Below are positions 44,339 to 45,889 of a stretch of 64,000 bases of DNA, one piece after another. The DNA is taken from positions 126,046,001 through 126,110,000 of the forward strand of contig NC_042997.1 of the NCBI RefSeq assembly GCF_006345805.1, read 5' to 3'. Every line of letters starts with the position of its first letter. The first letter of the stretch is position 1. The translations under genes were made by a program, and so were the position numbers. Below the pieces are notes generated by a model that did not search any database, was not told the DNA's origin, and worked only from the letters and a program-made list of their open reading frames with translations. The DNA comes from Octopus sinensis. Lineage: Eukaryota.

Positions 44339-45889
44339 GTATCCTTTATCGATGTCACGGTCCCTTTGATCTATACTTCTGATGCCAGTGTTAGGTGGAG
44401 CAATGTCTCAATATGGAGGGCTGTGGTACACCAGTACCATAGTTGTATGAGTGTTATATTGGTGAAAAATTAGTGTGGGGCAGTGAGCTGGCAGAAACGT
44501 TAGCACGCCAGGTGAAGTGCTTAGCGGTATTTCAGTTATGCACTGGGATTGATATAATCGACTTAATGGCCTCGGGCCGTCTGCCAGCCTCGTCTGGCAC
44601 CTGTGTCGGTGGCACATAAAAAACACCATCCGAGCGTGGCCGTCTGCCAGCCTCGTCTGGCACCTGTGTCGGTGGCACATAAAAACACCATCCGAGCGTG
44701 GCCGTCTGCCAGCCTCGTCTGGCACCTGTGTCGGTGGCACATAAAATCACCCACTACACTCTCGGAGTGGTTGGCGTTAGGAAGGGCATCCAGCTGTAGA
44801 AACACTGCCAGATCTGACTGGCCTGGTGTAGCCTTCGGGCTTGCCAGACCCCAGTTGAATCGTCCAACCCATGCTAGCATGGAAAGCGGACGTTAAACGA
44901 ACGATGATGAATGCGTTTGTCTGTCCTTGTTTGTCCTCTCTGTGTTTAGCCCCTTGTGGATAGTAAAGAAATAGTTAAGTACGACTGTTACTTAGTCTAT
45001 AGTTATAATTGTTGTGATGTCCGGACAGTGGCTGTTGTCTCCCTTGTAAGACACTGCCATTTCTGATGACCAACAAACTCAGCCTTGCACACTGTACTTC
45101 TATTGTTTATACTATATCAAAAAATATGTTCCCATTACCTGAATGTATACTACATAATGTTTCCACTACCATACTGCAAACTACACGACCACCACCAACA
45201 TATGTTCTCACTATGCACTATATATGTCCCCCATTACTTCATTCCACCACAACACTATGTCCCCATTAACCACCACACATTGTCCTCACTACACATCACA
45301 TAATATATCCTCATTAGCACACCCCCATACACCTTACAATATATCTTCACTACCGCCACACTACATCCCATACAATATATTCCCTCTATAACATTTTTTT
45401 CTTATTTTATTCACTCAAAAACTCATTTCCAAAGTTTGTATCATTAAAACTCTAAAAACATTAAGAGATGTGAAATAATGTTGTTTTTTTTATACTGCGG
45501 GTACTTGAAGTAGATAAAGCTGTAAATAATAGAATGTAAATATTGTGTTAAAAAGCCTCTTTGAGTAGAAAAAGTCGAATGCTGCCTCTTAGACTGCAAC
45601 CCACATCTTCTGTAGAAAAATTTAAAGGATTGCTTTGGTATAATGGTAGAACATCTGTCATGTCTACAGAAGATGTGTGTACAAGTCCTACAGGTAGCCT
45701 TCAATGTTTTCTATCCAAATGGTTTTTTATTAACCCAATAATGTAATTATCTATAGCTTTATCTACTATGAGTTCTACCTTTAAAAAAGAAAAAAAAACG
45801 AATTGTTTCCAAAGTATTTTTGTACCATGAAATATTGGAATGTTTCCTCTACATATTACTGTTGATTATTTTCCTTGACCAGTGTCCAG
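44339..45889 (+). other. U12-type (minor spliceosome) GT-AG intron, POLA2 intron 3
   Basis: 5' splice site GTATCCTTT at 44339-44347. Branch site TTTTCCTTGAC at 45869-45879, with its A 11 nt before the end of the terminal CAG. The flanking exons join in frame. Confidence 0.88.

What the first reader, a model, noticed from the sequence alone, without database searches (positions are those of the whole stretch)
44339..45889. Minor-spliceosome (U12) intron in POLA2, loaded with nested retroelements
Seen: a perfect U12 donor GTATCCTTT, a branch site TTTTCCTTGAC with its A 11 nt from the end of the CAG acceptor, no polypyrimidine tract, and an in-frame phase-2 junction (PSG-F-EDMMSMY) to a 43-nt exon. 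All other POLA2 and p62 introns here are U2-type. The 1551-bp intron also holds a SINE A copy split by an RTE 3' UTR insertion with tandem modules. Established: U12 introns are rare, slowly spliced and enriched in replication and cell-cycle genes. Inference: a rate-limiting control point for Pol alpha and evidence of a functional minor spliceosome in this lineage. Standard gene predictors may mis-splice it.
Basis: partly seen in the sequence, partly recalled or inferred. Interest (0 to 1): 0.7.

Follow-up and report, generated by a model that had tools for sequence, protein, structure and literature searches.

The report
Conserved U12 intron in octopus POLA2
The octopus gene for the B subunit of DNA polymerase alpha has one intron with the signals of the rare "minor" spliceosome, and it is the same intron already catalogued as minor in human and mouse POLA2, so it is real but ordinary.

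Summary
GTATCCTTT sits at 44339-44347, at the end of an 86-nt coding exon. TCCTTGAC sits at 45872-45879, with its A 11 nt before the end of the CAG that opens a 43-nt exon. The junction is in frame, in phase 2.

I rebuilt 13 POLA2 exons from the window. The spliced product hits all three POLA2 Pfam domains. Intron 3 alone carries U12 signals. The other 11 complete introns have GTAAGT-like donors.

This is not a new feature. MIDB lists human and mouse POLA2 as minor-intron genes with the same GTATCCTTT donor. In genomic loci of Mus caroli, aye-aye and a catfish the U12 intron is also intron 3, in phase 2, between the same exon boundaries (FLSKR... and ...TPSK|). An annelid and a beetle have a U2-type intron at that position.

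The NCBI model for Octopus bimaculoides POLA2 already contains ...DPSGFEDMMSMYNVKTPSS.... The worry that predictors mis-splice it is therefore not borne out there.

Minor introns in molluscs, Octopus sinensis included, are published. The nested-repeat description holds structurally. The "RTE" label is unproven. The "rate-limiting control point" idea rests only on analogy with human data.

The parts
39435..39507 (+). POLA2 exon 1 (ATG at 39435; ends in phase 1)
   Evidence: Reads METLSEELKSKFQLEDDENDVLDK, followed by GTAAGT. Matches O. bimaculoides P0131 and human residues 1-26.
42264..42397 (+). POLA2 exon 2 (ends in phase 0)
   Evidence: Part of the N-terminal domain (PF08418 hit).
44253..44338 (+). 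POLA2 exon 3, 86 nt, VLSKKAIAANNNNNSSITETESIEDPSG(F); ends in phase 2
   Evidence: It starts at the same point as mammalian exon 3 (FLSKR...).
44339..45889 (+). Intron 3, 1551 nt, U12-type GT-AG, phase 2
   Evidence: Orthologous to the minor intron of human and mouse POLA2.
44339..44347 (+). U12-type 5' splice site GTATCCTTT
   Evidence: The same nine bases as the human and mouse POLA2 minor 5' splice sites in MIDB. Only 3 of 9 matches to the U1-type consensus.
44485..44567 (+). Left arm of the outer SINE-like repeat
   Evidence: Other copies lie near 7040-7320(-), 12930-13110(-), 32630-32890(+) and 3630-3760(-). This copy lacks about 81 bp that the others have.
44568..44909 (+). Inner interspersed repeat inserted into the outer one
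   Evidence: at least 13 other copies in the window. (insertion point CGACTTAAT|...|AATGCG, with AAT on both sides).
44575..44751 (+). Tandem 62-bp modules, 2.8 copies, 98% matches, inside the inner repeat
44910..44977 (+). Right arm of the outer SINE-like repeat
45872..45879 (+). U12-type branch site TCCTTGAC (branch A at 45878, 11 nt before the intron end)
   Evidence: The mouse Pola2 branch site is CTCTCCTTGACC.
45887..45889 (+). 3' splice site CAG
   Evidence: The upstream CAG at 45880-45882 lies only 4 nt after the branch A, and using it would shift the frame.
45890..45932 (+). POLA2 exon 4, 43 nt, (F)EDMMSMYNVKTPSS; ends in phase 0
   Evidence: It ends at the same point as mammalian exon 4 (...YTTPSK|). 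Skipping it shifts the frame.
47351..47451 (+). POLA2 exon 5 (phase 0 to phase 2), MSKSKKRPRSPDIPKK...
   Evidence: 100% identical to P0131 residues 117-149. Its phases fix the frame of exon 4.
50198..50385 (+). POLA2 exon 6
52627..52715 (+). POLA2 exon 7
54237..54392 (+). POLA2 exon 8 (OB domain, 156 nt, the same length as in mammals)
55252..62538 (+). POLA2 exons 9-13 (55252-55314, 56327-56375, 57725-57846, 60971-61009, 62468-62538). The gene runs on beyond the window.

Best explanation
Window 44339-45889 is intron 3 of the octopus POLA2 gene (DNA polymerase alpha subunit B). It is a GT-AG intron of the U12 (minor-spliceosome) class.

Inferred mechanism, from the established U12 pathway:
- U11 and later U6atac pair with the GTATCCTTT donor.
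- U12 pairs with TCCTTGAC and bulges the A at 45878.
- The CAG 11 nt downstream is used as acceptor.
- This joins exon 3 to the 43-nt exon 4 in phase 2.

The intron is an ancient, positionally conserved minor intron. It is the same intron 3 as in human, mouse, aye-aye and catfish POLA2. It was therefore most likely already U12-type in the last common ancestor of protostomes and deuterostomes. It has been converted to U2-type in at least one annelid and one beetle.

The retroelement copies inside it are neutral cargo, far from both splice signals.

Failure to remove the intron gives a stop codon 11 codons into it, so unspliced RNA cannot make the B subunit. This allows, but does not show, dosage control through minor-spliceosome activity.
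For: Shown directly:
- Exact consensus donor and branch site at the right distance. The optimum of 11-13 nt is quoted in PMC6717393.
- A poor U1-type donor: 3 of 9 matches, against 6-9 of 9 for the other introns.
- A self-consistent 13-exon model. Its product hits PF08418, PF22062 and PF04042 above their thresholds.
- The phase series 1,0,2,0,2,1,0,0,0,1,0,0 is identical to that of mammals.
- The NCBI O. bimaculoides POLA2 protein P0131 contains ...IEDPSGFEDMMSMYNVKTPSSMSKSKKRP..., which covers both junctions of exon 4.

Orthology:
- MIDB lists the human intron (chr11:65267569-65268671, GCT|GTATCCTTT, branch site TTTTTCTTAACC) and the mouse intron (157 nt, GCT|GTATCCTTT, CTCTCCTTGACC).
- In Mus caroli, Daubentonia and Pangasianodon genomic loci this is intron 3, in phase 2. 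It lies between exons starting at FLSKR/VLNKK/VLNKR and ending at TPSK|/TPGK|, the same boundaries as in octopus.
- Dimorphilus (GTTTTT) and Diorhabda (GTATTG) keep a phase-2 intron there, but of U2 type.

Consequences of mis-splicing:
- Retention gives GLYPLSMSRSL followed by a stop.
- Skipping exon 4 shifts the frame.

Human analogy: siU6atac raises POLA2 minor-intron retention and lowers the protein.
Against: - No RNA-seq reads from this species were available, so use of the junction is inferred. The inference rests on frame, on conservation and on the sister-species annotation, whose transcript support I could not inspect.
- The donor at 44330 (CC|GTCAGG) is also in phase 2. It would give an in-frame product three residues shorter.
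- The residue-level alignment around the junction is ambiguous by about 7 residues, because the region is a low-complexity acidic linker. Orthology rests on ordinal position, phase and the flanking exon boundaries, not on an exact aligned column.
- No minor snRNA gene lies in the window. Dependence on the minor spliceosome is inferred from the signals alone.
Confidence: 0.93

Rival explanations
1. The intron is removed by the major (U2-type) spliceosome despite its U12-like motifs, either at 44339 or at the nearby GT at 44330. This would match what has happened at the orthologous position in the annelid and the beetle.
For: Conversion of this very intron to U2-type is seen in Dimorphilus and Diorhabda. 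The donor at 44330 is in the same phase and gives an open frame. The 3' region is 71% pyrimidine over -20..-4.
Against: Both candidate U2 donors are very weak: 3 of 9 and 4 of 9 matches to CAG|GTAAGT, against 6-9 of 9 for all other introns. All nine donor bases and all eight branch-site bases match the U12 consensus, and that is hard to maintain without selection. The O. bimaculoides protein keeps PSG, which the 44330 donor would delete.
Confidence: 0.04
2. The motifs are chance matches and the true exon structure is different, so exon 4 is not a real exon.
For: GTATCCTTT and TCCTTRAC each occur elsewhere in the window at about chance frequency. The flanking coding region is poorly conserved.
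Against: Exon 4 is needed to keep the frame between exons 3 and 5. It carries the conserved Y..TPS motif and ends at the same boundary as in five other animals. The same peptide is in the NCBI O. bimaculoides model. The ortholog in vertebrates has the same donor.
Confidence: 0.01
3. The intron is U12-type, and its slow removal is a conserved, rate-limiting dosage control on the Pol alpha-primase B subunit in proliferating cells.
For: The U12 type has been kept in vertebrates and in octopus. Retention gives an early stop. Human POLA2 shows retention and protein loss on U6atac knock-down. Published models propose that minor introns act as switches through unstable U6atac (PMC3728624) and that some are spliced slowly (PMC4066798), as their abstracts state.
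Against: An annelid and a beetle do without the U12 type at this position. A pan-eukaryotic survey argues that neutral processes explain much of minor-intron evolution (PMC10639083). In mouse tissues retained minor introns are on average the shorter ones, and this intron is long. There are no octopus expression data.
Confidence: 0.2

Closest known systems
Human POLA2 minor intron (MIDB: chr11:65267569-65268671, hg38, ENST00000265465) and mouse Pola2 minor intron (157 nt)
   Same: Same gene. Same ordinal intron (3) and the same phase (2). Same flanking exon boundaries. The same GTATCCTTT donor and GT-AG ends. A branch site of the TCCTTRAC type 11-13 nt from the acceptor. The mouse and octopus branch regions both read TCCTTGACCAGTGT.
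   Different: The octopus intron is 1551 nt, against 157-1103 nt, because of two nested repeat insertions. Exon 4 is 43 nt against 58 nt, since the acidic stretch is shorter. The split codon is Phe (TT|T) rather than Leu (CT|N). The -3..-1 bases are ATT, not GCT.
U12-type GT-AG introns in general (U12DB, MIDB, intronIC catalogues)
   Same: All the sequence hallmarks are present. It is the single minor intron among many major ones, and it sits in a DNA replication gene.
   Different: Nothing of note.
U12-to-U2 converted orthologs (Dimorphilus gyrociliatus intron 3; Diorhabda carinulata intron 2)
   Same: Same position and the same phase. The same short downstream exon, ending after TP.K.
   Different: Their donors are GTTTTT and GTATTG, and they have no TCCTTRAC branch site.

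Membership tests
U12-type (minor-spliceosome) GT-AG intron | 5' splice site matching /RTATCCTT from +1 | tested here: met
   GTATCCTTT at 44339-44347.
U12-type (minor-spliceosome) GT-AG intron | Branch site matching TCCTTRAC(Y) | tested here: met
   TCCTTGAC at 45872-45879 with 0 mismatches. Every other intron in the gene has at least 2 mismatches.
U12-type (minor-spliceosome) GT-AG intron | Branch A close to the 3' splice site (optimum 11-13 nt) | tested here: met
   11 nt. The optimum is quoted from PMC6717393.
U12-type (minor-spliceosome) GT-AG intron | Poor fit to the U2-type donor and no pyrimidine tract between branch site and acceptor | tested here: met
   3 of 9 matches to CAG|GTAAGT. 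The spacer is CCAGTGTCC. No published PWM score (intronIC or SpliceRack) was computed, because the matrices were not at hand.
U12-type (minor-spliceosome) GT-AG intron | The junction is used in mRNA | tested here: inconclusive
   Indirect only. The NCBI O. bimaculoides POLA2 protein contains the junction peptide, and the frame requires it. No reads or transcripts of this species were found.
U12-type (minor-spliceosome) GT-AG intron | Removal depends on the U11, U12, U4atac and U6atac snRNPs | not testable with these tools
   No snRNA gene in the window. Minor introns in molluscs, and conserved ones in a set that includes Octopus sinensis, are reported in PMC10639083 and PMC11347168.
Ortholog of the catalogued vertebrate POLA2 minor intron | Same position in the gene structure (ordinal intron, phase, flanking exon boundaries) | tested here: met
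   It is intron 3, phase 2, between exons that start at F/VLSK/NK and end at TPS/GK|. The residue-level alignment is ambiguous by about 7 residues.
POLA2 / DNA polymerase alpha subunit B | N-terminal domain, OB domain and phosphoesterase-like domain, in that order | tested here: met
   PF08418 (49 bits), PF22062 (118 bits) and PF04042 (41 bits, cut by the window end) all exceed their thresholds. 76% identity to O. bimaculoides POLA2 isoform X3.
   One copy (41079-41268) directly follows an RT-like ORF fragment. Pfam did not recognise that fragment, and no repeat library was available.

The most novel reading that the evidence does not exclude
The U12 type of POLA2 intron 3 has been kept since the protostome-deuterostome ancestor. 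The intron is followed by a conserved micro-exon carrying a Tyr..Thr-Pro motif. It may have been kept because minor-spliceosome activity sets the dose of the Pol alpha B subunit in proliferating cells. If so, the 14-base identity of the branch-to-acceptor stretch between mouse and octopus (TCCTTGACCAGTGT) would reflect a conserved regulatory site rather than coincidence.
Probability: 0.07. Interest if true: 0.45.

Novelty: already known. Interest (0 to 1): 0.12.

Why it matters
It matters little beyond good annotation. The intron is the octopus copy of a minor intron already catalogued in human and mouse POLA2, in a phylum where minor splicing is already documented. It is spliced correctly in the public annotation of a sister species.

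Its modest value is as one more clean example of three things:
- a minor intron conserved between vertebrates and a mollusc;
- conversion of that intron to U2 type in an annelid and a beetle;
- a U12 intron that tolerates about 500 bp of nested retroelement insertions away from its splice signals.

Tried and rejected
- Rfam at gathering thresholds on the whole window: no snRNA or any other family. The minor snRNA genes cannot be addressed from this window.
- ARAGORN on 40-50 kb: no tRNA-like hit for the SINE head.
- PDB search with the N-terminal peptide alone: nothing.
- First protein search with two conserved exons: only short anonymous fragments.
- Looking for the human intron's position in supplements of PMC7367187, PMC2831892 and PMC11347168: nothing held. 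I solved this by fetching mammalian genomic loci instead.
- Genomic locus of O. bimaculoides POLA2 (P0131) and of Panulirus (P0137): not on record. I could not compare the intron or its repeats between octopus species.
- Second GTATCCTTT at 49808: rejected as a splice site. It lies inside intron 5, no open frame ends there and no branch site follows.
- ATATCCTT on the minus strand at 12475-12482, inside a p62 intron: rejected.
- Alternative acceptor CAG at 45880-45882: rejected. It lies 4 nt from the branch A and shifts the frame.
- Pfam on the RT-like fragments, to support the 'RTE' label: uninformative.

Full report
**1. What is in the sequence**

Reading 44100-46200 confirms the coordinates given.
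- GTATCCTTT occupies 44339-44347.
- TCCTTGAC occupies 45872-45879, within TTTTCCTTGAC.
- The A at 45878 is followed by exactly 11 nt up to the end of the CAG at 45887-45889.

The open frame upstream begins after a CAG at 44250-44252 and reads VLSKKAIAANNNNNSSITETESIEDPSG, then TT. The frame downstream reads T + EDMMSMYNVKTPSS and is followed by GTAAGT at 45933.

On their own the motifs are not remarkable. GTATCCTTT occurs twice in the window against 0.68 expected. RTATCCTT occurs 4 times against 5.7 expected. TCCTTRAC occurs 9 times against 4.2 expected. The case therefore rests on where the motifs lie.

**2. The gene**

- An OB-fold exon in the window matches PF22062 fragments.
- I checked the human POLA2 sequence against PDB entry 4y97_A (100% over 598 residues). 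I then used it, and later the NCBI Octopus bimaculoides POLA2 isoform X3 (P0131), to locate exons by tblastn.
- I fixed the exon boundaries by eye on the splice sites.
- Thirteen exons lie in the window, from the ATG at 39435 to 62538. The gene continues beyond the window.
- The spliced 404-residue product has no stop codon. It hits PF08418, PF22062 and PF04042 above their curated thresholds.
- The window differs from O. bimaculoides by a few residues per exon, so it comes from a close but different Octopus species.

**3. Only intron 3 is of the U12 type**

The intron table gives these values for intron 3 (44339-45889, 1551 nt, phase 2):
- 3 of 9 matches to the U1-type consensus CAG|GTAAGT;
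- a perfect TCCTTRAC, 11 nt from the 3' end.

The other eleven complete introns have 6-9 of 9 matches (GTAAGT, GTAATG, GTAAGG, GTAGGT, GTGAGT). None has a branch-site match better than 2 mismatches.

The distance of 11 nt lies in the 11-13 nt optimum quoted in the MIDB paper (PMC6717393).

The second GTATCCTTT at 49808 lies inside intron 5. No open frame ends there and no branch site follows before exon 6. An ATATCCTT on the minus strand at 12475-12482 lies inside a p62/SQSTM1 intron and is not at an exon end. The visible p62 donors are U2-type.

**4. Is the junction used?**

- Exons 3 and 4 together make 129 nt, or 43 codons.
- Exon 5 (47351-47451, 100% identical to P0131) starts in phase 0. 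Exon 4 is therefore needed to keep the frame.
- Skipping exon 4 leads to an early stop. Using the CAG at 45880-45882 leads to a stop. Retaining the intron leads to a stop after 11 codons.
- The only alternative that keeps the frame is the weak donor CC|GTCAGG at 44330, which would remove three residues.
- The NCBI protein model for O. bimaculoides reads ...SIEDPSGFEDMMSMYNVKTPSSMSKSKKRPRSP.... This is exactly the 44338/45890 and 45932/47351 junctions, and it keeps the PSG that the 44330 donor would delete.
- I found no transcript-derived sequence of an octopus in the protein collection. Direct read support is missing.

**5. It is the known POLA2 minor intron**

POLA2 is called a minor-intron gene in a prostate-cancer study. 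There, U6atac knock-down raised retention of its minor intron and lowered the protein.

MIDB Tables S1 and S2 (PMC6717393) list:
- the human intron: chr11:65267569-65268671, 1103 nt, GCT|GTATCCTTT, branch site TTTTTCTTAACC;
- the mouse intron: 157 nt, GCT|GTATCCTTT, branch site CTCTCCTTGACC.

To place it in the gene I fetched genomic loci for Mus caroli (L001), aye-aye (L002), the catfish Pangasianodon (L005), the annelid Dimorphilus (L003) and the beetle Diorhabda (L004). I mapped each annotated protein exactly onto its locus.

In the three vertebrates the U12 intron is intron 3, in phase 2.

| Species | Intron 3 length | Donor | Branch site | Branch A to 3' end |
|---|---|---|---|---|
| Mus caroli | 157 nt (matches MIDB) | GTATCCTTT | TCCTTGAC | 13 nt |
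| Aye-aye | 173 nt | GTATCCTTT | TTCTTAAC | 13 nt |
| Catfish | 502 nt | GTATCCTTC | TTCTTAAC | 13 nt |

- The vertebrate intron lies between an exon that starts at FLSKR/VLNKK/VLNKR and a short exon that ends at ...TPSK| or ...TPGK| in phase 0.
- Octopus exon 3 starts at VLSKK and exon 4 ends at ...TPSS| in phase 0.
- The phase series of the first twelve introns is 1,0,2,0,2,1,0,0,0,1,0,0 in both octopus and mammals.
- Several exon lengths are identical (156, 63 and 39 nt).
- A plain protein alignment puts the two split codons about seven residues apart. This is inside a low-complexity acidic linker, where mammals have a longer run of Glu. Ordinal position, phase and both outer exon boundaries agree.
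- I conclude that the introns are orthologous.

Dimorphilus keeps all 17 introns in the same phases, but its intron 3 starts GTTTTT. Diorhabda has GTATTG at the corresponding phase-2 intron. The simplest history is a U12 intron in the bilaterian ancestor that was converted to U2 type in some protostomes. This is the direction the literature takes to be the usual one (PMC10639083).

**6. Context in the literature**

- Molluscs are described as relatively rich in minor introns. Octopus sinensis is one of the species in the pairwise conservation figure of Larue and Roy 2023.
- Olthof et al. [quoted passage not shown]
- The presence of a minor spliceosome in this lineage is therefore not news.

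**7. The repeats**

- BLAST of the intron against the rest of the window and an alignment of copies show an outer SINE-like element at 44485-44567 and 44910-44977. Other copies lie near 7.1, 13.0, 32.7 and 3.7 kb.
- This copy lacks about 81 bp, including a B-box-like GAGTTCAAATTCCGC.
- It is split at CGACTTAAT|...|AATGCG by a 342-bp copy of a second family that has at least 13 other copies in the window.
- The inserted copy carries 2.8 tandem 62-bp units.
- One copy of the inner family directly follows an RT-like ORF fragment at 40901-41101, but Pfam does not recognise that fragment. The 'RTE 3' UTR' label stays unproven.
- Both insertions lie more than 140 nt from the donor and more than 890 nt from the branch site.

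**8. Function**

The mechanism of removal is inferred from the established U12 pathway. Retention or mis-splicing destroys the reading frame. Minor-spliceosome activity could therefore limit POLA2 output, as the human knock-down data suggest. Nothing here shows that it does so in octopus. Two protostomes manage without the U12 type at this position. In mouse tissues retained minor introns tend to be the shorter ones.

**9. Verdict**

It is the expected ortholog of a catalogued vertebrate minor intron, already spliced this way in a public octopus annotation. Interest is low.

Noticed in passing
window 49808-49816 (+): A second perfect GTATCCTTT lies inside POLA2 intron 5. No open frame ends there and no TCCTTRAC follows before exon 6, so it is a chance match.
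   Followed up: yes
window 12475-12482 (-): ATATCCTT on the strand of the p62/SQSTM1 gene, inside one of its introns. Stop codons lie just upstream in all frames and no branch site lies downstream, so it is not a splice site. The visible p62 donors (PB1, ZZ, middle and large exons) are GTAAGT, GTAAGT, GTAAGA and GTAGGT.
   Followed up: yes
window 45872-45885; L001 (Mus caroli) 3' end of Pola2 intron 3: The branch-to-acceptor stretch TCCTTGACCAGTGT is identical in octopus and mouse. Aye-aye has TTCTTAACCAATGT and catfish TTCTTAACCCCATC. This is probably coincidence beyond the branch-site consensus.
   Followed up: partly
window 50609-51700 (+), POLA2 intron 6: A mariner-type transposase remnant: the ORF at 50794-51531 hits PF01359 at E = 1.7e-23.
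   Followed up: partly
window 54237-54392; protein P0131: The NCBI O. bimaculoides isoform X3 joins ...GRSSQ directly to IVAFD.... It therefore skips the 156-nt OB-domain exon in frame.
   Followed up: partly
L003 (Dimorphilus gyrociliatus) 501-3090: The annelid POLA2 gene has 17 introns of 48-59 nt. All are in the same phases as the 17 mammalian introns. Intron 3 has been converted to a U2-type donor (GTTTTT).
   Followed up: yes
window 3-984, 2335-2589 and 40901-41101 (+): Reverse-transcriptase-like ORF fragments. Only 3-269 gives a weak RVT_1 hit, below threshold. The fragment at 40901-41101 is directly followed by a copy of the inner repeat family (41079-41268).
   Followed up: partly
window about 16300-17700: A long TA/CA-rich simple repeat (GC 0.24, strong negative GC skew) produces long spurious open frames on both strands.
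   Followed up: no
window 6678-13511 (-): The sequestosome-1/p62 gene: a UBA-like exon at 6678-6926, a Pro/Gly-rich exon at 8572-9219, a ZZ zinc-finger exon at 11181-11468 and a PB1 exon at 13290-13511. It lies upstream of POLA2 on the opposite strand. The domain names come from reading the translations and were not tested.
   Followed up: no
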